Counted from the whole stretch's first letter, positions 1 through 23,549 are shown. The stretch: 61,731 nt of DNA, filler included, from Dimorphilus gyrociliatus (GCA_904063045.1; 4 parts of 4 records of this genome joined end to end with filler, not necessarily neighbours in it); one strand, 5' to 3'. The notes: generated from the sequence alone by a model not told the origin. Program-made: numbers and translations.

Positions 1-3000
1 TCTATTATCGCCAAGGTATATTTTCTCCAGTTTAGAGCAATTCTGTATGATTTTTCCAATTATCTCTCCGTGTATCTTTTTCAAATAGCATTCTGATAAG
101 TTTAAATTTCTTATTTCCGAATGTTTTTTCAACGATGATAAAATTGAATGGAAACTATTTAAAATTGTTTTATTCCCGCCTAAATTTATCTTAATAAGTT
201 GATTTGAATTCTTTAATAAATTTGATAAATTTACCGAAGTTTTCTCACTTAAATCACACCAAGAAATATCTAATTTTCTCAAATTTGAACATTTTTGAAG
301 AGATGAGAAAATGGTATTAAATTTTCTTTTAATGTTTTTATTCCAACTAATATTTAACATTGTTAAATTTTGATTTTCGAACAATTTACTTAATTGATCA
401 ACTTGATTTTCATTGAAATTGCATTTAGAAATAATGATTTCTTTCAAACAATTGCAAGTGGTAAGTGATGATATTATAACTTTTAAGTTATTAATATATC
501 TATTTCCACTTAAATTAATCTTTTCCAATGTAGAACACTTTTTTAACAATGTCCAATAAACTCCAAATTTTGATGGATCTGATCTTAAATTACTTAATCG
601 TATTTGTTTTAAATCTGTTAAATTCTTTAATGATGAAAAGATTACTTTATATGATTCTTGTAATCTTTCCTCGTTAGTTAATATAATCTCGTCCAATGAA
701 TTAGAATGTATACAAAGCTCTCTAATTAAATCAGCATATTTTTCATTAATATTACAATTTCTCATATGAATTTCTTTTATTTTTCTACAGGATCTGAGCG
801 ATTGGAAGATTGCAGACAATCCATCTTCAAGAGTATCATTTTCGTTTAGAAATACCTTTTCTATGTAATGGCAATTCTTAAAGACTCTACTCAATAGTTC
901 ACCATTTTTCTCATCCAATTTACAGTCCGAAAAGTTTATCTCTTTTAAATTAGGACATTTTATAAGCGACGAAAGAATATCCTCAAATCCTCTTTTAATA
1001 TTTCTATTACAGCTTAAATTAATTATCTGAAGATATTCGCTTTTATCAATAACTCTGCTTATCACATTACCATGTGTCTCTTTTAAATTGCAGGAAGAAA
1101 GTACTATCTCTTTTAAATGTAAACATTTACTGAGTGCAGAAAATATATTATACAATCCGTTTTCAAGAGCCGTATTACCGCTCAAATCCAATTTAGTCAA
1201 AGATGATAAAGATACCATCACATCTCCAAGCAGTTTTCCCTCATTTAAACCCATTTCGCAATAGGATAAATTTAATTCTTCCAATTTGGATAGTCTCATT
1301 TGAGAAGAACTCAAGAAACAAAAGTCACTTTGAATTATTTTGTTATAACTTAGATTTAGTACTCTAAGTGATTTGGTAGTTTTCATGATAGTTTCCAGTT
1401 CTTTTCCATGTTCTTTCCTCAGTTGAAAAGAAGGCATATGAATTTCCTTAAGTAGGCTACAGTCTCTGAGTGATGTTAGAACAGAAGCTAAACATTTACG
1501 TACATCTTTATTACCATTTAATAGTAACGTTTCAATAGAGGAACACTTGGATACTGTTTTACTTAACAAGATTAGATGAGATTCATTTAATTTGCAGTTG
1601 GAAAAGTTTAAAATTGAAATATTTGGACAATTTTCTAAATATCTAAAAATCTCTTTAAAACCATCTCTAATCATTGTATTTCCTTCCAAGTTAAGAATTT
1701 TAAGATATTTAAGATACTTAAGAACATTTCCAATTAATCGTCCTTGTTCTTCATTAAGTTGACAATAAGATAAATTGATTTCTTTAATATTTGGAGAATG
1801 AGTATCGAGTAACGTTATTATATATTTGAAATCGTTACTCGAAAGAATAGCGTAAGAAAGATTTAATCTTTCAATATTCTTATGAAATTTCCATGTTTCA
1901 TCCGGGAAGAGACTAAAATCCAAATTAATAAAAGCTATCTCCTTTTGTGATTGATCTGAACTATTAAAAATCATCTTAAGAGCTTTATAGAGTCTATTCA
2001 ATATATGATTTATATGATCATTATCTCTTTTCCGTACGATTTCCTTACCTAATTTTAATATTATTCCGCGTTTATTCTCTCTAGAATTATCATCTTCATT
2101 TAAAGAGTTATTGAACGCTTTATATTCTGTAAAATTTGAACAATTTCCCTTTTCATTAAACCAATTTGAATACAAGTTAAATATATAGATTTTCTCTTTT
2201 TCCCTATCATTGTAAAAACTTTCGCCATCTTTAAAATTATAATTTCTAAATTCGTAGTAGAACTCTGATTGAACAGTTTCAATATTTTTCAATAAAATAT
2301 TGTGAATATTTATCAATTTTATAGAGTTTTTTCTCCTTTTAGTTTCAATAGTATTGTAGAAATGATTAAATAGGTCAATTGATATCATCTTATTGCCTAG
2401 TATTAGCATTTCAAGTTCATTAAATTTATTTAACGTATTAATATAACCCTCGTTAATATTAGGAAGGAATCGGGTACTTGAATCTTTAAAGCAATTCATG
2501 AATATTGGTCCTTTCCAAATTTTTATATTACATGTATTAAAATCATTTTTATCATTAGAAATATGAATTTCTTGAATATATCGATAATCTTTATCATTCT
2601 CTCTAGAAATATGAATTGTATACTTTGATAATTTAATTAAATAGACTTTAGTTGATTTTAATAAGGAGAGAAATTTTTCAAAGAACAATTCGCTATTATA
2701 GAAAACTATGAATGATTCTTCATCTTCTATTCTAAGTATTTCTAAATGATATAGATATTTAACTATTGCCTTCATAAACACTGTATAATCAATTTTCGTA
2801 TTCTTTATGTTAATTTCTCTTACATCTTTTCCAATTTTCTTCAATAAGACTTTAAGCATTACACCGTCAATTCTTTCGTTTGTTAATGATAATATTTGTT
2901 TTTTAAGTCCCTTCTGTAATATATTTTTAACGAAATTGCTTGATTTATACATTGAATCGATAATTTTCGATTTTTGCAGTAACTTTTGAAAGAAATTCTC

Positions 3001-4533
3001 ATCGCCTTGCTGTACAAATTCCATAACGTTAAATAGTTGAAATTTATTACTCTGTTTAAAAAAATCGTCTAACTGTCTACTAGATGATCCCTTTTTTAAA
3101 AAGAACTGCTTAATACCATTATTAAACATATGAGAAAAATGATTAATAATAAATTTAGCAGCGAAAAATTCTTGAAAGGAAAGATGATAGAATTGAATTT
3201 CATACTCATCTTTGTTGCAATCTTTCTTTGGAAGAGTTTGTATGATGTTTTCTAAACATATTTTCACTTCATCTAACTCTTTGTCATGAACGCATAACGT
3301 AAATTCATTCTTCTTTAAACTATCGAATGATAACTTGTATATCTTATTCATAACACTCTCTACATCAATATTATTCTTATTAAGAGATTTAGTTTGTATA
3401 ATTGCAATTAGTTTATCGTAAAATTCGTATAGATTCTCTTTAAAATGATATTTACTATTTTCCCATACAAAATAGACGATCATCGCCAATAATGGAACTC
3501 TACAAAGATCTCTTATTTCCCAATTCTGTTTTTCTAACTTTTGAAGAAAATCTGATATTCTCTCCTGATTAACAATACATTTCTCAAAGAAACTTTTCAT
3601 TTGATTGTCACTAAATCCGACAAGTTCAAAAGTAAGTTCAAATGATTCTCGTATTTGTTCCGCTTTCCACTTTCTGGACCAAATAACAGTAGCAACGTCC
3701 GGATAAGGTTTCTCAAGTAAATCATTAATCTTATGGGGACTTATGTAAAATTCATCTGCGCCGTCTAAGAATAATAGAATGTTTTTATTTCTTTCTTTAA
3801 ATAACAATTCAATTATCTCTTTATCAATATAATCAATATTTCGAAAATTCTGTTCTAAAATGGCATCGTAAAGATCTTGATCTTTTCTAACGTCTCGTAG
3901 AGTTATAACTATTACTAATTTCTCCGAATTTACATTCCAAGCATCCTCTGACCAAGATTGCACTAGTCTCTTCACTTGAATTGTTTTTCCCATTCCAGGT
4001 TCACCGTATATTAAAATCTTATTAAAACCATCTAAAATTTCATGAAAATTCTCATATGATACACTGGTACTCCTCGAAGACGACTTTAGCGTTGAAGCAT
4101 TGTAGATTTGGGCGATTTCAATGGTAGTAACAATATCAACTAGCTTTACCTGTTTAATATCTTTAAAAGGTAGTGGTGTTATACAGTGCATATCTTTTTT
4201 TCTCTCTTCCTTTGTGTCTTTAACAAATGTCTTCCATACGAAGAGTGTATCTAGCAATTTATCGGCCAAATCTTTTAATGAACTCTTATCAATGGTTAAC
4301 AGAGCATCCGTTGTACTATCTAATGAAGTTTTGCCAAGTATATTCATCAAGTAATTAAGAGCCGATTCTATATTTTCTGTAGATTCTAAGTGTAAATGTT
4401 CAATTTCTGCGAATGATATAAGATTTCTTTCTGTAATCCCATCAAGAAATTGACGAAACGTTATTTTCTTATCCAATTCATCTTTTAGTAATTTCTTATA
4501 AAACTTTAAAGAGAGTAATTTTAAAGATTCCAT
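1..4533 (-). CDS. NLR-type protein: N-terminal death-fold (CARD-like), NACHT NTPase, ribonuclease-inhibitor-like LRRs; intronless, 3' end outside the window (>1511 aa)
   Basis: Manual translation from ATG 4533 (MESLKLLSLKFYKKLLKDELDKKITFRQFLDGITERNLISFAEIEHL) shows Walker A GEPGMGKT, Walker B ILLFLDGADE, CRVPLL and FYHLSFQEFFAA. LRRs follow (LNLSYCQL, LTKLDLSGN) and the frame is still open at base 1 (KLEKIYLGDNR). This explains its absence from the ORF track. Confidence 0.9.
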   Translation of the reverse strand, partial: MESLKLLSLKFYKKLLKDELDKKITFRQFLDGITERNLISFAEIEHLHLESTENIESALNYLMNILGKTSLDSTTDALLTIDKSSLKDLADKLLDTLFVWKTFVKDTKEERKKDMHCITPLPFKDIKQVKLVDIVTTIEIAQIYNASTLKSSSRSTSVSYENFHEILDGFNKILIYGEPGMGKTIQVKRLVQSWSEDAWNVNSEKLVIVITLRDVRKDQDLYDAILEQNFRNIDYIDKEIIELLFKERNKNILLFLDGADEFYISPHKINDLLEKPYPDVATVIWSRKWKAEQIRESFELTFELVGFSDNQMKSFFEKCIVNQERISDFLQKLEKQNWEIRDLCRVPLLAMIVYFVWENSKYHFKENLYEFYDKLIAIIQTKSLNKNNIDVESVMNKIYKLSFDSLKKNEFTLCVHDKELDEVKICLENIIQTLPKKDCNKDEYEIQFYHLSFQEFFAAKFIINHFSHMFNNGIKQFFLKKGSSSRQLDDFFKQSNKFQLFNVMEFVQQGDENFFQKLLQKSKIIDSMYKSSNFVKNILQKGLKKQILSLTNERIDGVMLKVLLKKIGKDVREINIKNTKIDYTVFMKAIVKYLYHLEILRIEDEESFIVFYNSELFFEKFLSLLKSTKVYLIKLSKYTIHISRENDKDYRYIQEIHISNDKNDFNTCNIKIWKGPIFMNCFKDSSTRFLPNINEGYINTLNKFNELEMLILGNKMISIDLFNHFYNTIETKRRKNSIKLINIHNILLKNIETVQSEFYYEFRNYNFKDGESFYNDREKEKIYIFNLYSNWFNEKGNCSNFTEYKAFNNSLNEDDNSRENKRGIILKLGKEIVRKRDNDHINHILNRLYKALKMIFNSSDQSQKEIAFINLDFSLFPDETWKFHKNIERLNLSYAILSSNDFKYIITLLDTHSPNIKEINLSYCQLNEEQGRLIGNVLKYLKYLKILNLEGNTMIRDGFKEIFRYLENCPNISILNFSNCKLNESHLILLSKTVSKCSSIETLLLNGNKDVRKCLASVLTSLRDCSLLKEIHMPSFQLRKEHGKELETIMKTTKSLRVLNLSYNKIIQSDFCFLSSSQMRLSKLEELNLSYCEMGLNEGKLLGDVMVSLSSLTKLDLSGNTALENGLYNIFSALSKCLHLKEIVLSSCNLKETHGNVISRVIDKSEYLQIINLSCNRNIKRGFEDILSSLIKCPNLKEINFSDCKLDEKNGELLSRVFKNCHYIEKVFLNENDTLEDGLSAIFQSLRSCRKIKEIHMRNCNINEKYADLIRELCIHSNSLDEIILTNEERLQESYKVIFSSLKNLTDLKQIRLSNLRSDPSKFGVYWTLLKKCSTLEKINLSGNRYINNLKVIISSLTTCNCLKEIIISKCNFNENQVDQLSKLFENQNLTMLNISWNKNIKRKFNTIFSSLQKCSNLRKLDISWCDLSEKTSVNLSNLLKNSNQLIKINLGGNKTILNSFHSILSSLKKHSEIRNLNLSECYLKKIHGEIIGKIIQNCSKLEKIYLGDNR

Positions 4534-5137
4534 TAGTATATTATGACGTTATAACTACTGGTAAAGGAAAAGCGTATATATTCTTAGAGCTTACTCAGCA
4601 GAATGTTTACCTTTAAAAAATAATTCCTTTGAACATATTCAACAAAGTAACTAATTGTTAAAAATAGAACGAAAACTGAACTAAAAAGGAAATAACTATA
4701 ATTGAAAGCTTGAACTTTGATACTAGTTGTAAGCCTATAGTAGTAAAAGGAAAGAGACTTAATGTTAATTTACATTAAGTGCAAATAGAGCTGAATTTTT
4801 TTAAATGTTCAAGCAAACTAGGCAGTTGAAACAAACATTCTTTTTTATTCAATTGATCAACTGGAAAATTCAAAACAACAATATTTTAAGAAATTAAACT
4901 AGTAATAAATTTATAGATTTGTCGTTCAGTCATTCTTTAACGACGCAGTATACCATTTAAACAATTTAATATTTCCTGAGCTGAACAAAAAGAAATAGGG
5001 ATAATTAAGACTTAATCCTCTCAACTCAACACAATTGCCACTTCTTTTCTCTATTAGCTCTACCCCTTTTATACTGGGAACAGATTTCTTTAAAATACAG
5101 CAAGCTTATAAGATATTCATTTAATAGATAACTGAAT

Positions 5138-6110
5138 TCTATGTCTATCGGCTAAGAAGTCATATGGAAGAAGAAAGCTGTTATCTTTTCATTAGCAAAC
5201 TGAATATCGTATTTAGAACGATAACAAATTAAAGTCGATAATTTATGTTTCTCTTATAGGTTCCCTAAAAATTTCCTTCAAGTCATAATTACATACTACA
5301 AGTCAAAATTGGGTTCATATAATAGGAGAATTTTCTTTGCATTGCTTTTTTCCTAATGTTTTCTTTATCACTTACAAATGGTTTACAAATCTGTTTTTAT
5401 TTTAAATCCATTTCAAAATTGTCTCGTCTGTTGTGATTATGTTTCAGATTCCCGTTTAATAAATAAATTTCCATTTTGTTTCTGGTTACACTTCTTTTCG
5501 TCCATTGATTGGCTCTCTGAATGAGCTTGATTATTATCTTTTACAACTGATTCTCTAAACTTTGCTTTTTCATCCTCCAATGTTGATTCTTCAAGTCCGA
5601 TAGTTTTGTGTTTATTATCAATCAACCTCTTTTTGCTAGAACCACTTTGTCCAAATTTATTCAGGAAATATAATTTGTCTTTCCAAGTATACACTGGCCA
5701 AAGTGAAAGTTTCCTTCAACCACTTCCACTTTTAAAATGGCTGCCATTCACTTTTCAACATTATCTTGTTTTTTGAAATAATAGTTCATAATGTTCAATC
5801 ATGCATAAAGTTTACAATCAGGCTATGTATTCAAAAAGTCAATGAAAAAATGAATTTAAAGACGGTACGAACGTCCCAGGGTACATTCACATAACAGAAT
5901 TTTATGTCTATCGGCTAAAAAAACCATATGGAAGAAGAAAGCTGTTATCTTATTGTAATCAAGCCGAATATCGTATTTGGAACCATAAAAATCTTTAAAC
6001 TTATCATTCAAATCATTACAACTTATAAGTCTTCTCGTAGTAATTGTTGCCATTCGAAACAATAATATAGATTTCCTTAAAAAGTTCTTTCAAGTCATTA
6101 TCACACATCA
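5138..6110. repeat. Local direct duplication (about 5138-5300 and about 5900-6110) flanking a MULE remnant
   Basis: TATGTCTATCGGCTAA..CATATGGAAGAAGAAAGCTGTTATCTT..GAATATCGTATTT occurs near 5140 and near 5902. A second shared block, TTCC(C/T)TAAAAA..TTCAAGTCAT, occurs near 5262 and near 6072. Confidence 0.65.
5437..5890 (-). mobile_element. Internally deleted MULE-family element remnant
   Basis: 5641-5760 is the reverse-complement homologue of 43150-43270, the 5' region of the MULE at 42948. The ORF 5437-5694 tail (HSESQSMD) matches QSENQSMD near 43800 and HSDSQSMD near 57680. A GGTACGAACGTCC/GGTACATTCAC terminal-type motif lies at 5863-5890. Confidence 0.55.
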
Positions 6111-6377: not shown

Positions 6378-8304
6378 ATGAAGGCTTCATCAACAGCATT
6401 TATATTAGGTGAGTGACAATTTTCATTTTTTTAAATCGTTCATCATTCTTTACCCTATTCCACTAGCAACGATAATTCCACTCTTTTATGGAAATCAGTT
6501 TCAATGTCCGCTCAATGAGAATCTACAACCCATCAATGGTACATTCCCTGATCCTACTTTTTGTAATGTATACTATCACTGTGTGAACGGAAATCCTTTC
6601 CCGCAACAATGTCCTCCAGGATTATTCTTTACTGTTAAACTGAAAAGTTGTCGATACTCAATCTGTGTAGATCCAAGTCAAGCAAAATGTCCAGGCGACA
6701 CTCCAGTTATATTCAATAATCATCAGCATCATGAGTCAGCAGAACAAAGAAATGATTACGCAAAATCTCCTGAAAAGAAGCAAGAGAATAGAAATGAATT
6801 TGAATGCGATCCAGCAATTGATGGTACATTCCCAAATCCAAAAGATTGCCGTCAATACTATCATTGTGTCAATGGCGTTTCTTGGCCACAACAGTGTCCT
6901 TCCGATTTCGCTTTCAATCCGAAACTGAATGTTCGAAACTGTAACATTCAAGTATGCGTTCCTACTTCAGAAGCATTTTGCGCAATAGATGGAGGGTGGT
7001 CCGAATGGGGCCAATTCGGAAACTGTTTTCCATCGTGTGGAAACGGTCTAAGAGTGAGAACACGAGAATGTAACAACCCTCCTCCATCGAATGGTGGTAC
7101 AGGATGTTTGGGTAATAGTGTTGACGCAGTGGAGTGTAATCAAGATGACTGTCCGGTGTTGGGCTCACCTTCTCCCGCTTTTTACGTTGGTAACAGAAGG
7201 TTAATTAGACCAACTCGTCGACATCCTTTTGACAAAGTAATGATAAATAGTGAAAACCTGTATGACTCTTCCGACTCAGCAATGAATATAACTACACCGG
7301 GTGTATATTTCGCTTCATTTGTTTACACAAGTAAAAATACTTATAGAGGAAGAGGAAGGCTGAATTCTCTTCATACTGAATTTTGGAGATCAGGATCAAA
7401 TGTAGGCGAAACAACTGATCAAATTCAATCACTTTATAAATACACTTCGCCTATTCAAATAACTCGAACAATCAATGACCTTTCTGGTTCAATATATGGA
7501 AGTGAAGATGGATTAGAAAGTTCATGGTTGGGATTTCGCTATGAAACCGACAATTTCTTGTTTGTATTGAGAAGTAGCTCTAGCTCAGCTGTCACAGTGC
7601 CTTTTACACGAACATTTGCTCGAGAAGGAATAACAGGAAGTTCTCTTTTCACTGTTAGTACGGCAGGCTATTACTACATCACTTTTAACTATGGCGTTCA
7701 TACCTCTTCTAACTTCTTGCTAAGGAAAAATGGAAATGATGTTCCTCAGATGCAATTTTTGGTTACAAGAACAAATACCCGTATCGATATGAAGTCAAAA
7801 TCGGCCATTTTACATTTTAATGCTGGCGATACTTTCAATATTGCGAGAAGAAGTGGATCGATATACGCCGATGGCGATAGGCAAATTGGACTTGTCGCTT
7901 TTAGGATAAATGGCACAAATGATTCTCCTTTAATATCAGTTGAAAGAACAACAGAGTTTAATTCAACCGCCTTAAGCACTGTATCTTTTGACAATGTTAT
8001 TCACAATGTCGGAAATGGTTGGGATCCTGATAATCATAACTATCGTTGTCATGTACCAGGCATTTACATGGTTTCATTGACTGTAGGAGGAAAACCTTTG
8101 AATCAATTGATAGCAGAAATTACAGTTAATAACGAAGTTCAAGGAAGATTGTTAAATTTGAATTCAAATTCACTTGAGAAATACGTTTCAAGGTCACTGT
8201 TAGTAAAAATGAATGAAAATGATGTTTTAAGAGTTCGAGGTAGAGGAACATTTGGAGTGACTTCAACTACTTCTCTATTCAATGTATTCTATGTTTCAAG
8301 TTAA
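6378..8304 (+). CDS. Secreted 2xCBM14 (peritrophin-A-like) - TSP1 - 3x gC1q protein, gene A (intact)
   Basis: Exon 1 is 6378-6408 (MKASSTAFIL), a phase-1 GT-AG intron spans 6409-6466, and exon 2 is 6467-8304. The protein has two C..C.YYHC..CP..C chitin-binding domains, a TSP1 (GGWSEW..CGNGLRVRTRECNNPPPSNGG) and three C1q-like modules (PGVYF, AGYYYITF, FDNVIHNVGNGWD..PGIYMVS). Confidence 0.9.
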
Positions 8305-9399
8305 ATTCAATGAATTATTTGATCATTGAATATGTCTAGTTATTTTAAATCCATAAATTGTAGCTAAATTTGAATACTTTTTAAAGGGTAAAAGTTAGTA
8401 TATACACGACTTTTTTTGAAATACAGGATTTATATTGAACACAAAATGGTTATTACATGTCAAAATTTCAGAAAGGTAGTCGAGATAAAGTGTACATAGC
8501 CTATGTACTTAATGTTCTTTGGTAAACAGCCCTTTTTGTTAGTTCATACGGATATGCTGCAATAGCTATCCGTTATAATTTATTTTTCCTCCATTATAAC
8601 CTTAACGCACAAAATATCCTACTCATCTATTCACCCTCATTCTTATATCAGTCCCTCAGACACTGCTCAAGTTCTACTAAGCGGTATTCCGACGTACTTA
8701 ACCCATTATTAGGATATAAACACGAACAAGAACACAAAACAAGAGATTCATATTCCATTTACTGATTAGTGAATCATGAACCATGAAACGCGAACCTCAT
8801 GTTCTCCTTATATCATTCAATCCTATCACAGATTTATATAATCATATATTATACATATTTAATAAATTAAACATCTTTTTTCAAGTTAATTTTTCAAGAA
8901 ATCTTTGATAGCCGGAATTGTAATCGGCACTGGTTTACCGATAAAAACAATTATATAATATATCATATATCGTTCTATAACAAGTTAATTTAAATTTAAT
9001 CAGTACTTTGCGTTTGTTATAGTAGTTGTTTCGGCTGTTTTCAGTAATATTCTATTTTGTCTATGTGCTAAATCATGACCGATTAGAGGAAAGTGCATTA
9101 GATAAAAAGATTTTAAATAGTAGCGCGAATTTATTGAATTCTAGATATTTTACTATTATACATATATATTATGCCATAATTAATATATTAGTATATGTCT
9201 ATACAAGATAACTATATAAAAAAAAAGGGATAATTGTCGCCATTTCGAACGCTTTTCGTCCTAAATTAACTTGATATGTAATTTAGTAAAAATTTTTAAA
9301 TGTGATCTCTTTGGTGATATCAATAAATAAGATAAGGCATTTATCGGACTATATATGAGCACCTGGTTTGAATTGTAATCTTCTATTTTAAAATCTACA

Positions 9400-11317
9400 A
9401 TGTTGAATACTTTGGTTGTTTTAGGTAAGAATATCCTAATCGACTATATAGTGATTTTTATTAAATTTTCATTTTATAGTCCTATATTTTTTGGTACCAA
9501 CACATCAGCAATTTCAATGTCCTTTAAATGAAAATTTACAACCAATTGACGGTACTTTTCCGGATAATGTTTTCTGTAACATCTATTATCATTGCATCAA
9601 TGGCACGGCGTATGCTCAACAATGTCCGCCTGGTCTTCTTTTTACTGTAAAACTAAAAAATTGCCTCTATTCTCTATGTGTAAAACCAAATCAGGCAAAA
9701 TGTCCAGGAGATAATCCCGTTATACTTAAAGAATTACATTCAAACAATTTAAAGCAAAAAGAGAATCACCTGAATAAACAATCGTTTACTTGTGATCCAA
9801 GAATTGATGGAACATTCCCAAATCCGGGAGATTGTAGGCAATACTATCATTGCGTAGGTGGTGTTTCATGGCCTCAACAATGTCCTGCCGACTACTACTT
9901 CAATCCAAAATTGAATATTCGTGATTGTAATATTAAAGTATGTGTTCCTCTATCGGATGCAAATTGTCCCATAAACGGAGAATGGTCTCAGTGGTCAGAA
10001 TTCACGGAGTGCTTTCCAACATGTGGTAATGGATTAAAGGTGAGATTCCGAGAGTGTAATAACCCACCTCCATCCAACGGAGGAAGAGAATGTGCAGGAA
10101 ATAGTGTAGACGCTTTAGAATGCGATCAAACCGATTGTTTGACGCCTACTAGTGCAGAGCCAACGTTCTTCGTTGCTAATCGGAGGGGAAGAATTGTTGA
10201 TACTGTACACCCTTACGATAATATACTAATTAATAACGAAAACTTGTTTGATTCTGGATCATCGTATATAAATGTCACGGAGAGTGGATTCTATTTTACT
10301 TCTTTTGGTATTACAAATAGTGGTAGCTATTTTGGATATGCATCAAGTGGTGCTGGAACAACAACGGAATATTCAAAGTTACACTCAAGAACAGGAATGC
10401 AAGGCCATTCTTATATAGCGTTACGAAAGTGGGAAAAGAATAGCATCATCAATCGTGCAGTTGTAACTAGGTCTCATGTTCATGGTACTGAAGATGGAAG
10501 AGATACCTACTGGCTTAGTTTTAGATACGTCTCTGATCATGTACTTTTTTTAGGTAGACGAACTCTCGTTAATACACCGGGATTAATCGACTTTACAGAA
10601 ACTATTACAAAACAAGGAATCACGGGAACTGATTCTATATTCGAGATCAATGAAGACGGACTTTATTTCGTAACAATTAATTTTGCACTGAGAGGACAAT
10701 CTATTTTCTGGTTAGAGAAAAACAATAATAGAGTTCCCGAAATGTCATTTAACTTCACCGCATCTTCTCCTTTTAGAAAAGATGCAACATCTAAATCAGC
10801 AATCATTCATTTTTCCAGGGGAGATAAATTTAACTTTCGTCTGGAAAGTGGACGTCTAGAATCAAATGTTTTTCTACCACTAAGTGTGGTTGCACTACGA
10901 TTGAATGGAACTGATGGCTCCCCTCTAATTAGTCTGGAGAGACGAACGTCATTTAATTCAGCTAATCAACTTTCAAGATTTACTTTTGACAATGTACAAC
11001 ACGATATCGGAAACTCGTGGAACTCTAACAGGAATGAATTTATCTGTAAAGTTCCTGGAATTTATATAGTCTCCATAGCAACAGGTATTGGTCAAGCTCA
11101 ACAAGGCTACCTAGAAGTTCACGTAAATGGTAGAATTGAGGGACGGATAATAAGTCTATTAAACAACGATAGATACACAGGCTTGATATCTAGATCTCTA
11201 TTGGTTACTTTATCAGAAAACGATGTGATAAGCATTGAAGGAAGAGGAATAATTGAATTGGATTCATCAACTACTGTTTGTGCTATTTTCTATGTATCAT
11301 CAACTGTATTAAATTAG
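9400..11317 (+). CDS. 2xCBM14-TSP1-3xgC1q paralogue, gene B (intact)
   Basis: Exon 1 is 9400-9424 (MLNTLVVL), a phase-1 intron spans 9425-9479, and exon 2 is 9480-11317. Domain order is the same as gene A. Confidence 0.9.
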
Positions 11318-11990
11318 ATTACTAGTTATTGTTACAAATTTATGGTTAATTCATTTTTAATTACGAGTTGAATATTCAATAAAATAAATTATAGAGTACC
11401 TTCACTACATCATAGATAGAAAAGTATCTTCCTTGTGGAGATCTTCATTCCGTATATATAAAATTTTTACCCAGTTGCCAATATATCATACAGTACTCAA
11501 TTAAACAGATACTTTTTGAAATGACACGTTTCCTGGTGTGTCATTGCAAAGTTATATGTTGTATAGGTCATTGAACTTCAAAAATAATAATAAAGGCCTA
11601 TTTTTACACATCTAATATCTTTCTATTCTTTTATTAGATAGAAACTTCTTTAGTTGACTAGGCTTGTTATTGACAATTGACTCAGCATTTCTGTCAAGTT
11701 CATCATAATAGGCCTAAAATTATTTTAATAATTTGATATTAAAACAATTAAATCTATAAAAGCATCCAAAATATCGGCATAATTAATTTTCTAAATAATG
11801 TAATCCATTGAGTATTTCCCTAAGTAATTTAGATATAAGTTTTACATTCGAAAAGCGTATTCCAAAACTTTAAATACTGAAATAATACAGTCCTTATCGG
11901 GAAGGTGTCTTTGTCGAAGGTGACAAAAGAGATAATAACTTTTATAAAAGCCATGACGAATTTCTTAAAAGATCATTAACTTTTCAAAGT

Positions 11991-13417
11991 ATGGAAAATA
12001 TGTTTAGATTACTTTTCATCGGTAAATCTATTTATAATTTAATTTATTATAAATTGTAATTGTTTGAAAATTGTATTTTTCAGTTATCTACGTCTATTAC
12101 GGATCGGTTCAAGGTTTTCAATGTCCTCTTGATGAAAATCTTAAACCAAAAGAAGGAACTTTCAGTGATCCTATTTATTGTAATGTTTATTACCACTGTA
12201 TAAACGGTACAGCATACCCTCAGCAATGTCCACCTGGATTACTTTTTACAGTAAAGCTTAAAAACTGCCGCTACTCTTTATGCGTAGATCCTAGTCAAGC
12301 ACATTGTCCAGGAGAAGAAATCGTTATATTAAACAATGTCTCAAATCAAAAGTCTGCTGTACAACAACCATCTTCTAAAGATAACTCTCATCAGGATTTT
12401 AAGTGTGATCCGAATATTGATGGAACTTTTCCAAACCCTTCAGATTGTCGCCAGTATTATCATTGCGTATCAGGCATTTCTTGGCCACAGCAATGCCCGT
12501 CAAACTATTATTTCAGTCCAACATTTAATGTTCGCGATTGTCAAGTGAAAGTTTGCGTTCCACTATCAGAGGCTCAATGCCCTGTGCATGGAGGTTGGTC
12601 TCAGTGGTCTGAATTTGGAGAGTGCTACCCTTCATGCGGCAATGGATTAAGAGTGAGAACTAGGGAATGCGACAATCCACCACCTTCAAATGGAGGAAAA
12701 CCTTGCATAGGAGATCAGGTTGAAATAAAACAGTGTAGTCAATCTGATTGTTTAATACCAGCAAATTCAGAACCAGTATTTTATATCGCCAATATAAGAA
12801 TTAGAGAAGTACAACACACTCATACGTTTGAAAGAATTCTAATAAATCAAAGAAACCTTATAAATGTAACAAATTCACATTTAAATGTTAAAGAAGCTGG
12901 ATTTTACTACACTTCATTCGGTATTACTACCTCTAAAAAATATTCTGGATTTATGAATGGTCTTGATAAGAGAACTACTATATACAAATCACATTCAAGG
13001 TCTGGAATGGAAACTGATGCAGTTGGATCATTAAACAAATTGCTACCAACATCAACTTATCGTCGTGAAGTTGACACAGCAACCTCTGTACTTGGTACTG
13101 AAACGGGATTCGATACTTACTGGCTCGGATTTAAATATACAACAAATCATGTCCTATCTGTTGGTTCATTACAAATTACAAGAGGGCCAAGAGTAGTAAT
13201 CTTCTCTCAGATATTTGAAAACAAAGGAATAATAGCAACTCCAACAATGTTTCGCGTAATTGAGGATGGATATTATTTTGTTGATTTAAATGTAGGAGTA
13301 AGGAAACAATCAAACGTTCGTATCAGAAAAAATAATCAACCTATTCCAGAATTATCTATAAATTTAGTTGATAAGCAAGAAGATTGGTTTTATACAAAGT
13401 CAAAATCGTCAATAATT
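11991..13417 (+). CDS. 2xCBM14-TSP1-gC1q paralogue, gene C (open up to the assembly gap; 3' part missing)
   Basis: Exon 1 is 11991-12021 (MENMFRLLFI), the intron is 12022-12083, and exon 2 is open until the N gap at 13418-13427, midway through the second C1q module. Confidence 0.85.
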
Positions 13418-13427
13418 NNNNNNNNNN

Positions 13428-14753
13428 AAGTTGTCAGCAGGGGGAGATTGTGAAACCATATGTGGTGAAGAAGAAATTCAGACTAGAAGGAGAAAGTGTG
13501 AAAATTCACCTCCATCTAATGGTGGAGATGACTGTCCAGGTGTTTCAATTGAGATAAGGTCATACATGAATCCAACTGTACAGAATATGAATATACAACT
13601 TTAATGGTTTCAATGAAAAGGTCTGTCCAGTTGAACAAAGGCAAAGTTAAATGGAGTTCAGTTGATTTAAATATTAATAATCTATTTAGCATTTCAAATA
13701 ATGCCATGCGTATTAAAGATCAAGGCATTATTAACTGTCACAACAGCAAGTTCATCAGGGGTATCAATGACCTGAAAAAAACTGGCAGATCTATAGAATT
13801 AACCAGAGCAAAAGGTAGTGGTGGATTGGATGTGTCAACAAGAGCTGGATTATTTTCTTTAAATAGTCTTTTTAGTCCTTCTGTTGAACAAGATTTTGAT
13901 TCAGCTCATGTTATTGGTAGTAATGATGGAAAAGAAATGGCATGGATGGGTTTTAGATATCAAACAGATGCGTATTTATTTGCTACAACTGACTATTCAG
14001 CAAATTATCAGAGTGAAAGTGTTCCACTTCCAAATATTATTACTCTAAAAGGATTTCACATTAGTCTAAATTTTAATGAGTTTAGAGCTCCAAGTGATGG
14101 AATTTACTTTATTCATTTTGGCTCTAGATTTGGTAATTATCATGAAATGTTTTGATACTCAGAAGTTTCGTTACAGTAGGTAGATTTATTTTGAGTGAGA
14201 GATAATCTGTAGAACATCAAGTGTCCAGGGGACAAATAGCAGTTGAGAGACTGGGTAGAAAACTCAAGTTTCAATCAAGGGATATAATTTTATCTACATC
14301 TAAAATGGATACTTATTTAATAGCTTTCAAATTAAATTCTGATCTACCTGCAGTTTCTGTTGAAGTAATGAAAATGAAAAATAGAAGGATAGATTGCTCA
14401 TTTAATGGTTTTTCAAAACAGTCAAATTTAACCTTATTATAGTTGATACAACAAATTCTTGGAATAAACAGAGGAATCTTTTCATTGCAGACTTAGAGGC
14501 CCTGTATTATGTTGATGCAACAGTCACAGCTCCTGCTGGAAAATCTGTAGAAAGTTTTATGGAAGTAAAAGGAGTGAAAATGAGTAGATTAGAGAAATTG
14601 AGCTCTACACATCATGGTGGAGAAATAGTTTCTAGAGGCTATTTAGTAAAGTTGAAGGTAAAGGACACTTTGAAACTAGTTTTTAAGGGTTGTCTAGAGT
14701 ATGAACAACTTCAACCATCGCTTACCATATTTGCTCTTCAAAAAGAACTTTAA
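13428..14753 (+). pseudogene. TSP1-3xgC1q paralogue, gene D (5' part lost in gap; disrupted)
   Basis: A TSP1 remnant (CGEEEIQTRRRKCENSPPSNGGDDCPG) is followed by C1q modules split over ORFs 13604-14155, 14221-14442 and 14559-14753. It is closest to gene F (KGKVKW vs KGKVEW). Confidence 0.7.
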
Positions 14754-15246
14754 TTACATTTGGAACAAAAACTTGATGTTAAATAAAGGGGATTGTCAGT
14801 CTATACTGATTGTGCTAATCCCTAACCTCAACAACTAATCCATGTCCACATAAAGAGAAGAATATATTCAAATAAAGGAGACAAAAATTCCCGACCCATT
14901 TTACCAACTCATTAACAAATCTATTATCTGAAGTTACAAGTGAAGAGTAGTGATAAGATAACAAATGAACTTGGACAACAGCACTTTCCTGATAAAGGAC
15001 AACATACAGTTTTAAGCTTATTTGTAGTTAATTTCAAATGGGATACACCAAACACAATGAAGAGTTCAAAAGCTGTAACTGTTTTCTAGATAACAGAGAT
15101 TTATGGTAATCTGAACAAATTTATGATAAAAAATTTTTGAAACTTTTATTTACACACAGAGATAGGTGAGAATTTTGCAATTTCTGATTAATCTAATTAA
15201 TCTAAATTTAACAAAACAGGGAAAAAAAATATTGAGTTCTGTCAGA

Positions 15247-15554
15247 ATGATGATGATGATAAAAACTGCAAAAGCATTTTTTCTTATTTTTGTAATAGGT
15301 AAAAAAGTTTGAATAATTATAAAAACTGGTATTAATTTTGCAGTGTGTTTGGCAAGACAGAGCATCTGTTTTCTATGGCCAGAGGATCCCATTGGGATGA
15401 AGATTTGCAACTATTAGATGGTGCATTTGCTAATCTGAATAATTGCACTATTTACTACCATTGTATTAATGGAACATCTTATGCTCAGCAATGCCCACCT
15501 GGCCTGTGTTTACAAACAACTGTGTTTACAAGTTTGAAGTATAAAAGCAATTAA
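15247..15554 (+). pseudogene. Truncated single-CBM14 copy, gene E
   Basis: A signal-peptide exon ends ATAG|GTAAAA near 15298 and the acceptor TTGCAG is at 15342. A frameshifted CBM14 (DGAFANLNNCTIYYHCINGTSYAQQCPPGL) follows and ends in a stop. Confidence 0.6.
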
Positions 15555-15649
15555 TTCTTATCAAGATTAAAGATAATATAGTAGATAATAACATATCCTT
15601 TTTGCTATATAAAGGAAAGCCATTTTTTCTTAAAACACACAAATAAACT

Positions 15650-17611
15650 ATGTATTTTTCATATGTAATTACTTTAATGGGTAAATTTTTTATTTCTTTT
15701 CAAATTTTCCTTAAAATTCAACATAAGGTTTTCTTCAGTAATATCATTGGTGGAATGGAGCAATGCCAAATTTGTTTGTCCACTTAATTCTGAATTAAAA
15801 CCAGTTGATGGTTCTTATCCTGATCCTGACTATTGTGGAATTTATTATCATTGCATTAATGGTACAGCCCATCCTCAGCAATGTCCACCTGGTCTTTTCT
15901 TTACAGTTTCTTTTACAAATTGCAAATATTCTTTATGTGTTGAACCACATTTGGCTGATTATCCAGGAGGAGGTAATTCATCAACAGCAATTTTATCAGA
16001 TGATGCTCCTGTGTGTTCCAAGGATGATGACAATACAGTAAACACTTTTGAGAGATCTTGTTATACAAAAATAGTGACTGTGAAGATGATCTAAATGGAA
16101 CATTTCCTAATAAGAATGATTGTAGGCAATATTATCATTGTTACAATGGAGTTTCTTGGCCTCAGCAATGTCCCCAAGGTTACTTTTTCAGTCCATCATT
16201 AAATCTCCGCGAATGTGCAGCAAGAATATGTGTCACTGCTGAAGAATCACAATGTCCAATTGCTGGAGGGTGGTCTGAATGGTCAGAATGGAGTGGATGT
16301 GAACCAAACTGTGGAGATGGTTTGAGAGCTCGTTCAAGAACTTGTACAAATCCTCCACCAGCCAATGGAGGAGATGAATGCCCAGGATGTTCTTCAGATG
16401 TTAAATTATGTACAAATCCTCCTTGTAATTTAAATAAATAGCCAGCATTTATGGTTTCATCAATCAGAGGTCCACACTTTACAAAAGGAAAGGTGGAATG
16501 GATGTCAATAAATCATGATAATGGAAATGTATTCAATGCATCTACAAATGAATTAAATATAAAGAAAAGTGGTTACTATTATATTTCAAATACTGCCACT
16601 ACAACTAAAACTAGTGCAACTAACTTATCATTAAGAAATAGATAAGGGTTAAGTACAACTGCTCAACTTTATCAACAAGAAAGCTATTTCCAGGACACTT
16701 TTGCAAGATCTGGATTATACTTTCTAACTTCTCTCTCCAAGCCAGACATATATTCAACAACAAACTCAATAACTTATAGCAGTAAAATGGGCTCTGAAAC
16801 ATTTTGGTCTGGTTTTTTTTATGATCCTGATGTTGCATTTTTTGCTGGGAGATTTAATAGTGATTCAATAGAGGGAGATGAACGGATTCTTACAAGGATT
16901 GTTTCTATAAAAGGTGCCTATTTAAATAGTGACAGAACACGAATAATAGTAAAAAAAAAGGGATGGTTTTATATTAATTTTGGAACAGGTTTTTCTAGTT
17001 TCATAGATGGTATTGTAAGCTTAACATCAAAAGGCACTTCGATATCTTATGAAAGATCTGCTGCAAAAGGTCATAATAGTATGAAAAGTAATCAAGTCTC
17101 AAGAGGGATTGTTATGGAGCTTGATGCTAACGATTGGATATCTCTAAAACTGGTAAAAGGCACTTCTAGATCACACGAGTTTGATACCTATGTTTCAGGA
17201 TTTCAATTAAATACATCAGTACATACACCAGCATTTTATGCCTATAGAACACGAAATTTAGTAACACAGTCAAGAGTAAAAATTGACTTTGATGAAGTTG
17301 TATTGGATACACATTCTGGATGGAATTCTGCAGATAATACATACAAGACTGCAGTTTCAGGTTTGTATCACATTGATATATCTGCTGGTTCATGGCCAGG
17401 AATACAAACTGTGGTACATGTAAAAGTAAACAACAAGCAAACCTTAAGTATGCAAAGGTTGAAGGCTAGAACAGCATTTGAAAGTATGAGCAGAGCAGGA
17501 ATATTAAAATTGGAAGCAGGTGATACTGTCACAATTGAGACATTACACAGTCTTTATATTGATACCTGGAAGTTAACATCTTTTGTATTGTTTCATGTTT
17601 CTCCACTATAA
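15650..17611 (+). pseudogene. 2xCBM14-TSP1-3xgC1q paralogue, gene F (one frameshift, two in-frame stops)
   Basis: Exon 1 is 15650-15680 and the intron is 15681-15738. There is a frameshift near 16060 and TAA stops ending at 16441 and 16645. The full domain set is still readable through to 17611. Confidence 0.8.
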
Positions 17612-17712
17612 ACTACATTGTCTTTGATTTTAATTCATAATATCAATTTCAATTTCTACATTCCCCCAATCTTTATTCTATCGCTACTCTTATCTAACAA
17701 TTATTATATCCA

Positions 17713-19470
17713 AAATGAATTTAAATTTAACAATCTTCCTTGAACTTTGTTATTAACTGTAATTTCAGCTAACAATTGTGTTAAATGTGTACAGTTAATG
17801 AAACCATATAAATGCCTGGTACATGACAACAAAAGTTATGATTATCAGGATCCCAGCCATTTCCAACATTGAAAATAACATTATCAAATGATACAGTGTT
17901 TAAAGCTGTTGAAATAAAGTCTGTTGTTCTTTCAACTGATATTAAAGGAGAATCATTTGTTCCATTTATTCTGAAAGCAACAAGTCCAATTTGCTTATCA
18001 CTATCGGAGGATATTCTTCCACTTTTTCTGGCAATATGGAAAGTATCACCAGCATTAAAATGTAAAATTACTGATTTTGACATCATATCAAAAACTCTAG
18101 TACTTTTTGTAACTAACAATTGCATCTGATGAACATCATTTCCATTTTTCCTTAGTAAAAAGTGAGAAGAATATTCAGCTTGATAGTTAAAAGTGATGTA
18201 GTAATAGCCTTCTGTAGAAACAGTGAAAATAGAATTTCCAGTTATTCCTTCTTGAGCAAATATATTTGTAAAAGGCATTACCACCAAATTGTGAAAGTCA
18301 TTAACTCTTAGTGCAAACAAGACATTCTCTGTTTAATAACGAAATTCCAACCATGAACTTTCTAATCCATCTTCACTTCCATAAACAAAACCAGGACTTA
18401 AATAGATTTTACGATATATTTGAATAGGAGAAGTGTGCTTATAAAGTGATTGAATTTGATCAGTTGTTTCGCCTCTTCTTATTCCAGTTCTCCAAAATTC
18501 AGTTTCCAAACCAGGCAATCTCCCACGTCCTCTATAGCCACTTTTACTTATCAAAATAAATGAAGAGAAATATATTCCAGGTGTAGTTATATTCATTGTT
18601 GAGTCAGAAGCATCATACAGGTTTTTGCTATTTATCACTACTTTGTCAAAAGGGTGTCAATCATTTGGTTGAAAAGATCTTCTATTACCAACATAAAAAG
18701 CAGGAGAAGGTGAGCCCAACACTGGACAATCCTGTTGATTACATTCCATTGCATCAACACTATTACCCAGACAGCCTGCACCACCATTGTATGGAGGAGG
18801 GTTGTTACATTCTCATGTTCTCACTTTTAGACCATTTCCACACGAGGGAAAGCAGTCTCCAAACTGTGACCATTCAGACCATCCTCCATCTATTGCACAA
18901 AATGCTTCTGAAGAAGGAACACAAACTTGAATATTACAGTTTCAAACATTCAATTTGGGATTGAAAGCCAAATCAGAAGGACACTGTTGTGGCCAAGAAA
19001 CACCATTGACACAATGATAGTTTTGACGACAATCCAAATTGCACTCAAATTCATTTCTATTCCCTTGCTTCTTTTCAAAAGATTTAGCAAAATCATTTCT
19101 TTGTACTGCCAACTCATGATGTTGATGATTATTGAATATAACTGGAGTGTTGCCTGGACATTTCACTTGAGTTGGATCCACACAGATAGAGTATCGACAA
19201 TTTTTCAGTTTAACAGTAAAAAGTAATCCTGGGGGACATTGTTGAGGGAAAGGATTTCCGTTTATACAGTGATAATATACATTGCAAAAAGTAGGATCAG
19301 GGAATGTACCATTGATGGGTTGTAGATCATTATTGAGTGGACATTGAAATTGATTTCCATAAAGAAGTGGAATGATCATTGCTAATGGAATAATATAAAG
19401 AATGATGAATGAGTTAAAAAAATGAATATTTGAAATTACCTAATATACATGCTGTTGATGTAGCCTTCAT
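17713..19470 (-). pseudogene. Inverted, 3'-truncated pseudogene copy of gene A (gene G)
   Basis: High nucleotide similarity to gene A, including the promoter, exon 1 (ATG 19470) and the intron. It has a deletion in CBM14-2 and CGA>TGA stops. Homology ends near 17713. Confidence 0.88.
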
Positions 19471-20123: not shown

Positions 20124-23100
20124 TTATTTTTTTTGTAAAAGTCTTCTCAACAATAGGCCTGATCTTTTAATATCTTCCCTTGAGAGAGATTTTGACCAGG
20201 CAGATGATGTTTTAAAACTGATAAAATAGTCTTCTTGTTCAAAAATAATTGCTTTGTAATCAATTGCCTCATTCAAACAGAAAAAATATTCATGACAAAA
20301 TTCAACAGCAGTAAATATATTAAAAGCTATATTCTTTAAATTTGATGGACTCAACATTTCTTTATCAAAGTTTGCTAATGTTTTAGAGTCATTTGGAGAA
20401 TTTTCAAAGAGAATTTTTTTTGAGAAAGCATTCTTATAAAAACTAAAATCTAAAGAAAAATAGCAAATTTTTTTTTACTGGGACAACAACTGGTAGAGAA
20501 AACAAGTAAAATATTTACATTTTTCACCAATTTCTAATTCTAATTTTTGTTTTTTGTTTTTTCTGAAGAAATTAATTAAAATAAATTGAAAATTTTTAAA
20601 TTTTCTAATTTTACCTGTGTCGTTTAACTATTTCTTTGACTTCTGAAATTGTATAACAATATGGATTCAAAATAGAATTTAAAGGTAGGCAAAACATCAT
20701 TAACCAAGCGTATAGATCATTAGGAATATTCACATCAATTATAATTGATACTAATCCTGATGTTGCATTATCAAAAGAGTGAAAAAAGATAAAAAAAGAC
20801 CTACCTAAACCTGACATAGGAAACCATATTATTGCATTAGATAATGCAATAAAGAAAATACTACTCTTCACAGTAAAACTAGTTTTTTTGGCATAAGAAA
20901 ATTTTCCATCTCTAATAATTAAAAGTGACCACATTTTTATATAAACAATAGATATTGCCAATGTAATAACAAATTGAAAGCAACTTTGAAATAGAAAAGA
21001 AAAAATCCATCCTTCAACTTTTAGACTTCTAATAAAAAAATTTATACAAATTGGAAAATTTGAATAATAGTCCTGAAAAAAAAATTAAGTATATAATAGA
21101 AATGACAATAAATAGAACAATCTACTTTGTAATAGATTAAAGGAAATAATGAACCAAGCAATGAGATGAAGCCAAAAATGATCATAATACCAAATACTAT
21201 TACCAAATTATCAAAATATTTTCTAAAAGGATATTTAATGACAAGATATCTTTCAAGAGAAATTATAAATATTATTAATGAAGATAGAGTTAATGAAAAT
21301 GAAATCATAAATCCAATTGCATTACAAGTAGTACTTTTCCTCCATATTCCATCAATCATGAAATATTTCCCTTTAAATTGTTCATTCTTTATTGCCAAGA
21401 TAATAACTTGAATGCTAGTCAATAAATCACTTAATGGTAATATAATTAAAAAAAGATGAGATTTTCTCTTAAATCTAAAAATTCTAAACATAATTGACAA
21501 TATATTTCCAATAGCTCCAAAGGTACTTATCAACCAACAGAACACTTTCAATATATCTGAAGCTAAGATATCTGAACAAGAAATATACAAAGCACTAGAA
21601 GGATAACAATTAAATGGGTGTTGAATTTTATGCCAAAAATAACAACAATATGAAAAATATTGACTGGAAACTAATTGAATAGAATTTAAATATTTAAAAA
21701 CATCTAATGTTTCTAAATGTATTTTTGAATAATTCAAAATTAAATTGGTTAGTTTGTGAAAGCTAGAGAAACTATTTTGTTCAAAATTTGTAATAAAACA
21801 ATTTTTAATGATTAAATGTGTTAAATGGATATTCTTGTAAAAATGTCTGTTACTGATGTAGTGTAATGACACATTGTCAATTTGGATAAAGAGAATATTG
21901 GGAAAAATCTCAAATGAAAAATCATCTATATCATTTGTATCAATATTTTGCAATGAAACATTTTGAGTAATTGCCATTGGTTTTCTATTAAAGTATTTTG
22001 AAAATTCAATATTCATATTTTGAATTTGAACTGTGATAAGATTAGGAAATACATTATTAAAGAATATTTCATTTATACTTGAGCTATTAATTCTAAGTAT
22101 ATAAATATTTTTAAACATTGAAGTATTCTGGAAAGCAATTATTGCATAATTTATAATTAAAGTTTTGTAATGTGAACTTTGTATCTTGTCAGCAAATTGA
22201 AGTTTTAAATGTTTATTTGTATTATTACAAATGATTGATTTACTTTTAATGTGTAAATCACAGGAAATGTTGAACTCAACAATTGAACATTCAAGTTCAT
22301 CACTGCCATCTGAGCAATCAATGAATTTATTGCAAACTTTATCCAAAGGAATGAATATATTAAATTTTTCACATTTAAAGAAATCTTTTAGTATGAAATT
22401 TTCTAAAAAAATTAAAATTTCAACAATTTGTAGTTTTTATGATAAAATGGTATGAAAAGGTAAACATCTAACATATCCAGAACACTTCAAATCGATATAT
22501 AATATATTAGGACAAGTAAGGCAAACAGAAAGGGCTTTTGGCAATGACACCTTCTAGAGTAAGCAATACTTTAAGATATAAGACACCCTTACAAGAGACT
22601 CACAGAAAGACATTTACCAAGAAAAAGTAGGACTGTGAGAAGGCTTAAAAGAAATTAGGAGAGGGTGACAGCTGGGAAGATTTTAAATGAATTAGAGATA
22701 GCTGTAGGTCTTAAGACAATTCAGAGGGAGGTGAAATGGCAAAAGAGAATACAAGAAAGTGTTGATCTCACACCTAAAAACAATGCTGTTTGAACACTAT
22801 CTGTGATAACTTAGAATGGTCCAGAGTGATTTTTACAGATGAGGCTAAATTCTCACTGAGGACTTCGGGACCTGGACAAATAAAAGCAGAAATGACAGCA
22901 GATTGAAGAAAAATATGGGCAGGGGTGGAGTAATGGTTTGGGGACTAATAAACTCATATGGGGGTTTTTGAGGTTTGATTTTTTAGTTGTTTACTTTATT
23001 ACCGCAATCATTTTCATCATCTCCAAGTCTACAATGTCTAATATTATCGCACAGCAGATTTATTGGTATACAGTAGCCATCTTCTTTACATTTGTATGTT

Positions 23101-23549
23101 CCATGTTTACATTTATAATCAATGCATTGGTATTGATAATGGATTAGATTAACAAGAGGTAAAACTATTCCATTTAGGATGTCGTAATAAAGGTAGCAAT
23201 CATCCTTCGATTTTGAACAGTCTGTAAACAAAACTGGTAAGGTAAAAAATATTCTTTGTCGCCTTCTTTTCTACCCTCTTCGCCTTGTTTGGAACACAAC
23301 TTTGACATTTCATCGCTGCTATCATCGCATTTAAAATTTTTATTACATGTTTCTTTGTTTGGTATGCATTTCTTATTGTCGCAATGAAATAGATTTTTTT
23401 GACAATACTCTTTCAAAATGAATGTTTTCAACAATGTTTTAAAGAATTAAAAAAAAATTATTTTACTATTTTCTCCATTTGGTATGATATTTTTACAAAT
23501 TTCATCAGAAAGGTCTAAACAATTTGGTTGTGCATCACAAAATTTTTCC
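20124..23549 (-). CDS. GRL101/relaxin-receptor-like LGR: multiple LDLa repeats, LRRs, 7TM and a kinase-like C-terminal tail; 5' end cut by MULE insertion
   Basis: LDLa repeats include CIPINLLCDNIRHCRLGDDE, CIPNKETCNKNFKCDDSSDE, FCDAQPNCLDLSDE and CNKFIDCSDGSDELEC. The LGR hinge FSYCC and 7TM motifs (GAIGN, LSDLL, SLERY, CLPLNSILNPYCY) are present. Short GT-AG introns join the ORFs in frame. Confidence 0.82.
22620..22900 (+). mobile_element. Tc1-like transposase fragment within the receptor gene span
   Basis: Reads RRLKRN..TAGKILNELEIAVGLKTIQRE and EWSRVIFTDEAKFSL (22811-22860), the first catalytic D region of Tc1, with stops. Confidence 0.55.

What the first reader, a model, noticed from the sequence alone, without database searches (positions are those of the whole stretch)
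6378..19470. Tandem array of secreted chitin-binding / TSP1 / triple-gC1q proteins: candidate VCBP-like mucosal recognition system
Seen: seven copies in 13 kb (two complete, one open to a gap, four degenerate). The complete copies are signal peptide, 2x CBM14, TSP1, then three tandem gC1q modules in one chain, with one phase-1 intron after the signal exon. Established: gC1q heads work as trimers and bind varied ligands, CBM14 binds chitin, and TSP1 is the properdin module. Chordate VCBPs tether variable Ig-V domains to gut chitin. Inference: three heads in one polypeptide could fold as a single-chain heterotrimeric C1q head anchored to a chitinous matrix or to chitin-walled microbes. That would be a C1q-based analogue of VCBPs. 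I do not recognise this architecture as a named family.
Basis: partly seen in the sequence, partly recalled or inferred. Interest (0 to 1): 0.85.

Follow-up and report, generated by a model that had tools for sequence, protein, structure and literature searches.

The report
Annelid chitin-domain triple-C1q gene cluster
A tiny marine worm carries a cluster of genes for secreted proteins that join chitin-binding-type domains to a predicted one-chain, three-headed C1q binding unit; this unnamed family may tether microbes to a chitin lining, but neither its binding nor its tissue has been tested.

Summary
There are seven copies: A and B intact, C cut by the gap, D–G broken. Intact copies read signal peptide, 2x CBM14, TSP1, 3x gC1q, with one phase-1 intron. 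The gap is not continuous: it joins copy C's second C1q domain to the TSP1 domain of copy D.

AlphaFold folds the three C1q modules into one single-chain trimer (pLDDT 93; TM 0.88 to single-chain human C1q head, 5HKJ). The architecture is an unnamed family of dinophilid annelids: 13–14 annotated genes in Dimorphilus gyrociliatus, plus unidentified runs. Capitella has a CBM14 + triple-C1q fusion that is probably independent. Secreted triple-C1q proteins are known in bivalves; I found no paper on the chitin-domain fusion.

Evolution fits a conserved anchor with a variable head (about 50% versus 25% identity) and gene birth-and-death. Positive selection is not shown. Chitin binding is unproven: both CBM14 domains are 7-cysteine variants that probably lack the chitotriosidase Trp465 equivalent. 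Expression was not testable.

Verdict: a new variant of multi-C1q lectins. A VCBP-like barrier role is most likely (about 0.5); a structural matrix role is the main rival. It is not a VCBP.

The parts
6378..8304 (+). Copy A, intact gene, 622 aa: signal exon 6378-6408, 58-nt phase-1 intron, exon 2 6467-8304
6499..6693 (+). A: CBM14 domain a (7 Cys, extended hairpin)
6799..6981 (+). A: CBM14 domain b (7 Cys)
6985..7155 (+). A: TSP1 repeat (6 Cys, WxxW)
7174..8301 (+). A: three tandem gC1q modules (7174-7545, 7546-7911, 7924-8301), predicted single-chain trimer
9400..11317 (+). Copy B, intact gene, 620 aa; signal exon 9400-9424, 55-nt phase-1 intron
11991..13417 (+). Copy C, open frame cut by the assembly gap inside C1q module 2; signal exon 11991-12021, 62-nt intron
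13418..13427 (.). Assembly gap; the two sides belong to different paralogues; probably 1.1 kb or more is missing
13428..14750 (+). Copy D, broken (TSP1 remnant + 3 C1q; 3 frameshifts, 1 stop); closest relative D. gyrociliatus DgyrCDS14474
15250..15506 (+). Copy E, 5' fragment (signal exon, 45-nt intron, part of CBM14 a, frameshift); closest to DgyrCDS14811/14774
15650..17611 (+). Copy F, full length but broken (frameshift near 16065, stops near 16440 and 16643); sister of DgyrCDS2148
17716..19470 (-). Copy G, inverted duplicate of A (83% nt), 4 in-frame stops, 30-nt and 7-nt deletions, truncated in C1q module 3

Best explanation
A dinophilid-annelid family of secreted two-ended binding proteins that works like VCBP at a mucosal surface, most likely the gut. 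Shown by sequence: signal exon, 2x CBM14, TSP1, 3x gC1q, no collagen or coiled-coil stalk. Predicted: the three gC1q modules close into one asymmetric C1q-type head, so no oligomerisation stalk is needed and each of the three faces can evolve separately. Inferred: the conserved CBM14 pair anchors the protein to a glycan scaffold (chitin of a peritrophic-type membrane, or chitin of food and microbes), TSP1 is a rigid spacer, and the divergent head binds microbial glycans. Paralogues give different specificities and turn over by duplication and loss.
For: Fold: pLDDT 92.9, pTM 0.93; whole-length match to single-chain C1q 5HKJ, TM 0.88; Z 46.6-47, rmsd about 2.1-2.2 A over about 365 residues. Mean paralogue identity CBM14/TSP1 49-52%, C1q modules 23-29%. 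A versus G dN/dS: 0.14 (0.07-0.24) N-terminal, 0.48 (0.34-0.67) head; apex loops 48% changed versus 14-18% elsewhere, Fisher p<1e-4, dN/dS 1.06 (0.70-1.55). Arrays with broken copies here and in D. gyrociliatus. Neighbours: a NACHT-LRR gene upstream and RING-LRR genes beside the closest homologues. Triple-C1q HcC1qDC6 binds bacteria, LPS and PGN and is induced (PMC5519582). Annelid peritrophic matrix contains chitin and VCBP-C tethers bacteria to chitin (PMC6109156). Dinophilids lack chaetae (PMC7854359 supplement), removing the usual structural chitin target.
Against: No expression or binding data. The CBM14 domains are atypical: spacing, the Capitella alignment and the modelled strand register put an acidic or polar residue at the Trp465-equivalent position, and EHEP and Der p 23 have this fold without binding chitin. 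Apex dN/dS does not exceed 1 and G is a pseudogene. The apex excess is absent in both recent D. gyrociliatus pairs (p=0.87, 0.07) and significant in only 3 of 9 pairs. Disulfide-rich domains evolve slowly anyway. Several subfamilies are kept across species. Chitin in the dinophilid gut was not verified.
Confidence: 0.5

Rival explanations
1. Structural matrix or adhesive cross-linker. The protein is secreted into cuticle, egg cocoon, cyst, gliding mucus or peritrophic matrix. CBM14 binds the polysaccharide scaffold, the single-chain C1q trimer is a protein-protein node like collagen VIII/X NC1 trimers, and the odd seventh cysteine of each CBM14 could form interchain disulfides. Head divergence is then relaxed constraint.
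For: CBM14, TSP1 and C1q are common in lophotrochozoan shell and tube proteomes (PMC6368272; PMC8476170; PMC13425148). Both middle cysteines are kept in 25-28 of 27-28 sequences per domain, leaving one unpaired within each domain. No dN/dS significantly above 1.
Against: Four of seven copies are broken and arrays turn over quickly. No low-complexity, Gly/His-rich or collagen tracts. Dinophilids have no chaetae. NLR and RING-LRR neighbours.
Confidence: 0.3
2. Soluble opsonin, agglutinin or feeding lectin. Both ends face outward: the CBM14 pair recognises foreign chitin or other glycans (fungi, diatoms, biofilm) and the C1q head binds a host receptor or mucus, or food-derived compounds as EHEP does. 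There is no self-chitin anchor.
For: Bivalve C1qDC proteins agglutinate and opsonise (PMC6835236). A CBM14 triplet in Aplysia (EHEP) binds polyphenols, not chitin, and is a PDB hit of domain a. Dinophilids live on biofilm and algae.
Against: A host-receptor-binding head should be conserved, but the head is the divergent part.
Confidence: 0.17
3. The array is largely an assembly artefact (uncollapsed haplotypes, consensus errors).
For: An internal gap; one frameshift lies in an A run; no reads could be checked.
Against: Copies are 50-83% identical with saturated synonymous sites and fall in separate subfamilies with their own relatives in D. gyrociliatus.
Confidence: 0.03

Closest known systems
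Secreted multi-C1q proteins (smultiC1q) of bivalves, e.g. HcC1qDC6 (PMC6835236, PMC5519582)
   Same: Signal peptide, usually three tandem gC1q domains, no collagen, tandem gene clusters.
   Different: No CBM14 or TSP1 described there; genes here are two-exon; the intramolecular trimer was not discussed in the passages read.
Chordate VCBPs (VCBP-C; PMC6109156)
   Same: Secreted; CBM14 joined to a variable binding end; multigene family; proposed tethering logic.
   Different: Binding end is gC1q, not Ig-V; CBM14 is N-terminal, doubled and 7-Cys; TSP1 spacer; no homology outside CBM14; no functional data here.
Dimorphilus gyrociliatus unnamed genes (DgyrCDS2147, 2148, 3194, 9668, 14474, 14696, 14764, 14767, 14774, 14811, 14961 and others)
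   Same: Same architecture, same phase-1 intron after the signal exon in the three genes checked, same 7-Cys CBM14; subfamilies shared with copies D, E and F.
   Different: 29-35% identity to copy A; the A/B/C/G clade has no D. gyrociliatus member among the hits; unnamed and uncharacterised.
Capitella teleta CAPTEDRAFT_223943, 223944, 190519
   Same: Signal peptide, CBM14, three gC1q in one exon; tandem pair; phase-1 intron at codon 11.
   Different: One CBM14 without the extra cysteine, a Thr/Pro stalk instead of TSP1, two more introns; its C1q triplet nests among Capitella triplets and a joint clade is rejected (p-AU 4e-5).
Human C1q head (engineered single chain, PDB 5HKJ) and gastropod QREPs (Ig + C1q; PMC8878817)
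   Same: Three different gC1q modules in one head (predicted); QREPs show C1q fused to another recognition domain.
   Different: Natural C1q uses three chains and a collagen stalk that recruits C1r/C1s; none here. QREPs carry Ig domains and no CBM14.

Membership tests
C1qDC / smultiC1q | gC1q fold | tested here: met
   Pfam C1q above cut-off; each module matches gC1q structures
C1qDC / smultiC1q | Secreted, multiple tandem C1q domains | tested here: met
   Hydrophobic signal exon read by eye, no SignalP available; three modules
C1qDC / smultiC1q | Only signal peptide, with or without coiled coil, before the C1q domains | tested here: not met
   2x CBM14 + TSP1 precede the heads; this falls in the 'other' class of PMC6835236
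C1q-like type I / complement C1q | Collagen Gly-X-Y stalk | tested here: not met
   No Gly-X-Y runs; no Collagen Pfam hit
VCBP | Two N-terminal Ig-V domains | tested here: not met
   No Ig hit; the non-CBM part is TSP1 + gC1q
VCBP | Single C-terminal CBM14 | tested here: not met
   Two N-terminal CBM14 domains
VCBP (works like) | Binds chitin through CBM14 | tested here: inconclusive
   Pro451/Gly453/Leu454 equivalents kept in domain a; Trp465 equivalent is Tyr in one register but Asp/Glu in the register favoured by spacing and the model
VCBP (works like) | Gut expression and tethering of bacteria | not testable with these tools
VCBP (works like) | Hypervariable recognition end | tested here: inconclusive
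   Head about half as conserved as the anchor; apex dN/dS about 1 in A/G only; not reproduced in D. gyrociliatus pairs
Peritrophin / insect peritrophic-matrix protein | CBM14 repeats with or without mucin tracts, six Cys per domain | tested here: not met
   Seven Cys per domain and a 380-aa C1q head
Properdin | Chain of 6-7 TSP1 repeats | tested here: not met
   One TSP1 repeat

The most novel reading that the evidence does not exclude
Annelids evolved, probably twice (dinophilids and Capitella), a functional analogue of chordate VCBPs in which a single-chain heterotrimeric C1q head replaces the Ig-V pair: a diversified repertoire of chitin-anchored microbe traps on the peritrophic membrane.
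Probability: 0.33. Interest if true: 0.78.

Novelty: new variant of a known kind. Interest (0 to 1): 0.56.

Why it matters
Annelid gut chitin barriers are known but their immune proteins are not (PMC6109156 lists none for annelids), and annelids are described as having few secreted C1qDC proteins (PMC8878817). A family of 13 or more genes in a lineage with very compact genomes, coupling a CBM14 pair to a single-chain C1q trimer, gives a concrete testable candidate in a culturable worm. If it tethers microbes to chitin it is convergence on the VCBP design with another recognition fold. The trimer model also suggests why lophotrochozoan multi-C1q proteins usually have exactly three domains. If it is structural, it is a modest lineage-specific matrix protein.

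Tried and rejected
Reading through the gap: rejected, the two sides are different paralogues. Word-index search with the C1q region alone found nothing; the whole-protein and HMMER searches worked. Exact look-up: window proteins are not in the collection. Paper searches found no description of the architecture; subscription papers such as Gorbushin 2019 were not readable. Positive selection: tested, not shown. My first reading that domain a keeps the Trp465-type aromatic was weakened by the alternative register. One clade of Capitella and dinophilid C1q triplets: rejected by AU test, with a long-branch caveat. The species of the Logan runs could not be named. Broken copies were read with X at each break.

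Full report
Observation. tblastn of the three long ORFs against the window gives seven copies. A (6378-8304, 622 aa) and B (9400-11317, 620 aa) are intact; C (11991-13417) is open up to the gap. A, B, C, E, F and G share one GT-AG phase-1 intron of 45-62 nt after a signal exon of 25-49 nt. Pfam finds two CBM_14, one TSP_1 and C1q. D has three frameshifts and a stop; E is a 5' fragment; F has a frameshift and two stops; G, an inverted 83%-identical duplicate of A, has four stops and two deletions. Broken copies were read with X at the breaks. Reads were unavailable, but several independent stops are unlikely to be consensus errors.

The gap. Left of 13418 is C1q module 2 of copy C; right of 13427 is the TSP1 module of copy D, whose best relative is a different subfamily (DgyrCDS14474, 79% nucleotide identity starting about 608 nt into that gene). 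C lacks about 167 codons and D about 600 nt, so the gap is not continuous and is at least about 1.1 kb if both genes are whole there. Whether C is intact is unknown.

What it is. All named full-architecture hits are unnamed genes of the dinophilid annelid Dimorphilus gyrociliatus, 13-14 annotated; the rest come from unnamed Logan runs. Four further unannotated copies, two with stops, lie in D. gyrociliatus loci L005 and L013. Non-coding and transposon matches of 72-97% to D. gyrociliatus contigs suggest the window comes from a close dinophilid relative (inference). In the tree, F pairs with DgyrCDS2148 and D with DgyrCDS14474, while A/G and B/C group with three Logan proteins. The array thus mixes old subfamilies with newer duplicates. 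The three D. gyrociliatus genes checked have the same single phase-1 intron.

Structure. AlphaFold2 on the 379-residue C-terminal part (82-sequence alignment, no templates) gives pLDDT 92.9 and pTM 0.93, all beta. The best PDB matches are engineered single-chain trimers over the whole length: C1q head 5HKJ (TM 0.88), adiponectin 4DOU, Cbln1 5KCA; Z 45-47, rmsd 2.1-2.3 A over about 365 residues, against Z up to 19 for single domains. The intramolecular trimer is well supported as a prediction, not shown by experiment. There is no collagen. In the full-length model the CBM14 and TSP1 domains fold and the linker between the CBM14 domains is low-confidence.

The chitin-binding claim is weaker. Both CBM14 domains have seven cysteines, with an insertion in the C-terminal hairpin. 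In chitotriosidase, Pro451, Leu454 and Trp465 matter most (PMC5459812). Pro, Gly and Leu are kept in domain a. An ungapped alignment puts a conserved Tyr/Phe (22 of 27) at the Trp position, but spacing to the last cysteine, the alignment to the Capitella domain and the modelled strand register make the next cysteine the canonical fifth one, leaving Asp/Glu there. Domain b lacks an aromatic in either register. Binding residues differ among CBM14 domains and some do not bind chitin (EHEP preprint 10.1101/2023.06.04.543649). The spare cysteines may pair between the two domains or between chains (inference).

Evolution. Mean pairwise identity is 49-52% for CBM14/TSP1 and 23-29% for the C1q modules. 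For A versus G, dN/dS is 0.14 N-terminally and 0.48 in the head. With loops defined from the model's strands and the standard jelly-roll topology (apex assignment from my own knowledge), apex loops differ at 48% of sites against 14-18% elsewhere (p<1e-4), dN/dS 1.06, CI 0.70-1.55. This fits diversification or lack of constraint; G is a pseudogene; and two recent D. gyrociliatus pairs show no apex excess. A NACHT-LRR gene lies just upstream and RING-LRR genes flank the closest homologues in two other samples: weak context evidence. The D. gyrociliatus genome paper reports nine expanded families, mostly local and immune-related (PMC7854359); I could not see whether this is one.

Wider distribution. 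Triple-C1q proteins of about 400 aa without CBM14 are many among the hits and known from bivalves (PMC6835236; PMC5519582). Capitella teleta has three genes of signal, one CBM14, Thr/Pro stalk, three C1q. Their triplets nest among other Capitella triplets, and holding them with the dinophilid triplets is rejected (p-AU 3.8e-5, 38 rows, quick tree, long branches). Two independent fusions are the simpler reading; one old fusion with losses is not excluded. A molluscan TSP1+C1q cluster exists.

Mechanism. Most likely (0.5): a secreted two-ended lectin, anchored by a conserved CBM14 pair to chitin or a similar glycan of a mucosal lining and binding microbes with a variable single-chain C1q head, in the manner of Ciona VCBP-C (PMC6109156, which also states that annelid peritrophic matrix contains chitin). 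Dinophilids lack chaetae. Architecture is shown; trimer is predicted; anchoring, tissue and ligand are inferred. Rivals: structural matrix cross-linker (0.3), soluble opsonin or feeding lectin (0.17), artefact (0.03).

Membership and novelty. It is a C1q-domain protein with a smultiC1q-type head, not a VCBP, peritrophin, properdin or complement C1q. I found no paper describing the fusion, though subscription papers were out of reach. New variant of a known kind; interest 0.56.

Noticed in passing
window 1-4533 (-): Intronless NLR-like ORF of at least 1511 aa (NACHT E 2e-15, LRR region), cut by the window edge, head-to-head with copy A about 1.8 kb away.
   Followed up: partly
window 20611-23434 (-): LDLa + LRR + rhodopsin-type 7TM receptor pieces (GRL101/LGR-like); a relative (31% identity) also lies near DgyrCDS14474 in L015.
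   Followed up: partly
window 23557-25646: MULE/FLYWCH transposon remnant; 23617-23963 is 97% identical to D. gyrociliatus L013, far above gene-level identity, suggesting a recent or horizontally shared element.
   Followed up: no
L012 2117-4428 and 10001-12052 (Capitella teleta): Tandem pair of signal-CBM14-Thr/Pro stalk-triple C1q genes, apparently undescribed.
   Followed up: partly
L005 6673-19569: D. gyrociliatus cluster of five family copies, three unannotated; another unannotated broken copy at L013 14203-16089.
   Followed up: partly
L001 1227-3098, L004 2081-4189: RING(-B-box)-LRR genes next to the closest homologues of copies A-C.
   Followed up: partly
P0178 (DgyrCDS14768): 1813-aa model joining a caspase domain to a complete family member; probably a gene-model fusion.
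   Followed up: no
window 5128-5227 and 5891-5991: 100-nt direct repeat (84%) between the NLR start and copy A.
   Followed up: no
P0042, P0049, P0063: Annelid proteins with six C1q domains (two triplets) or PAN + triple C1q, suggesting the triplet is a shuffled unit.
   Followed up: no
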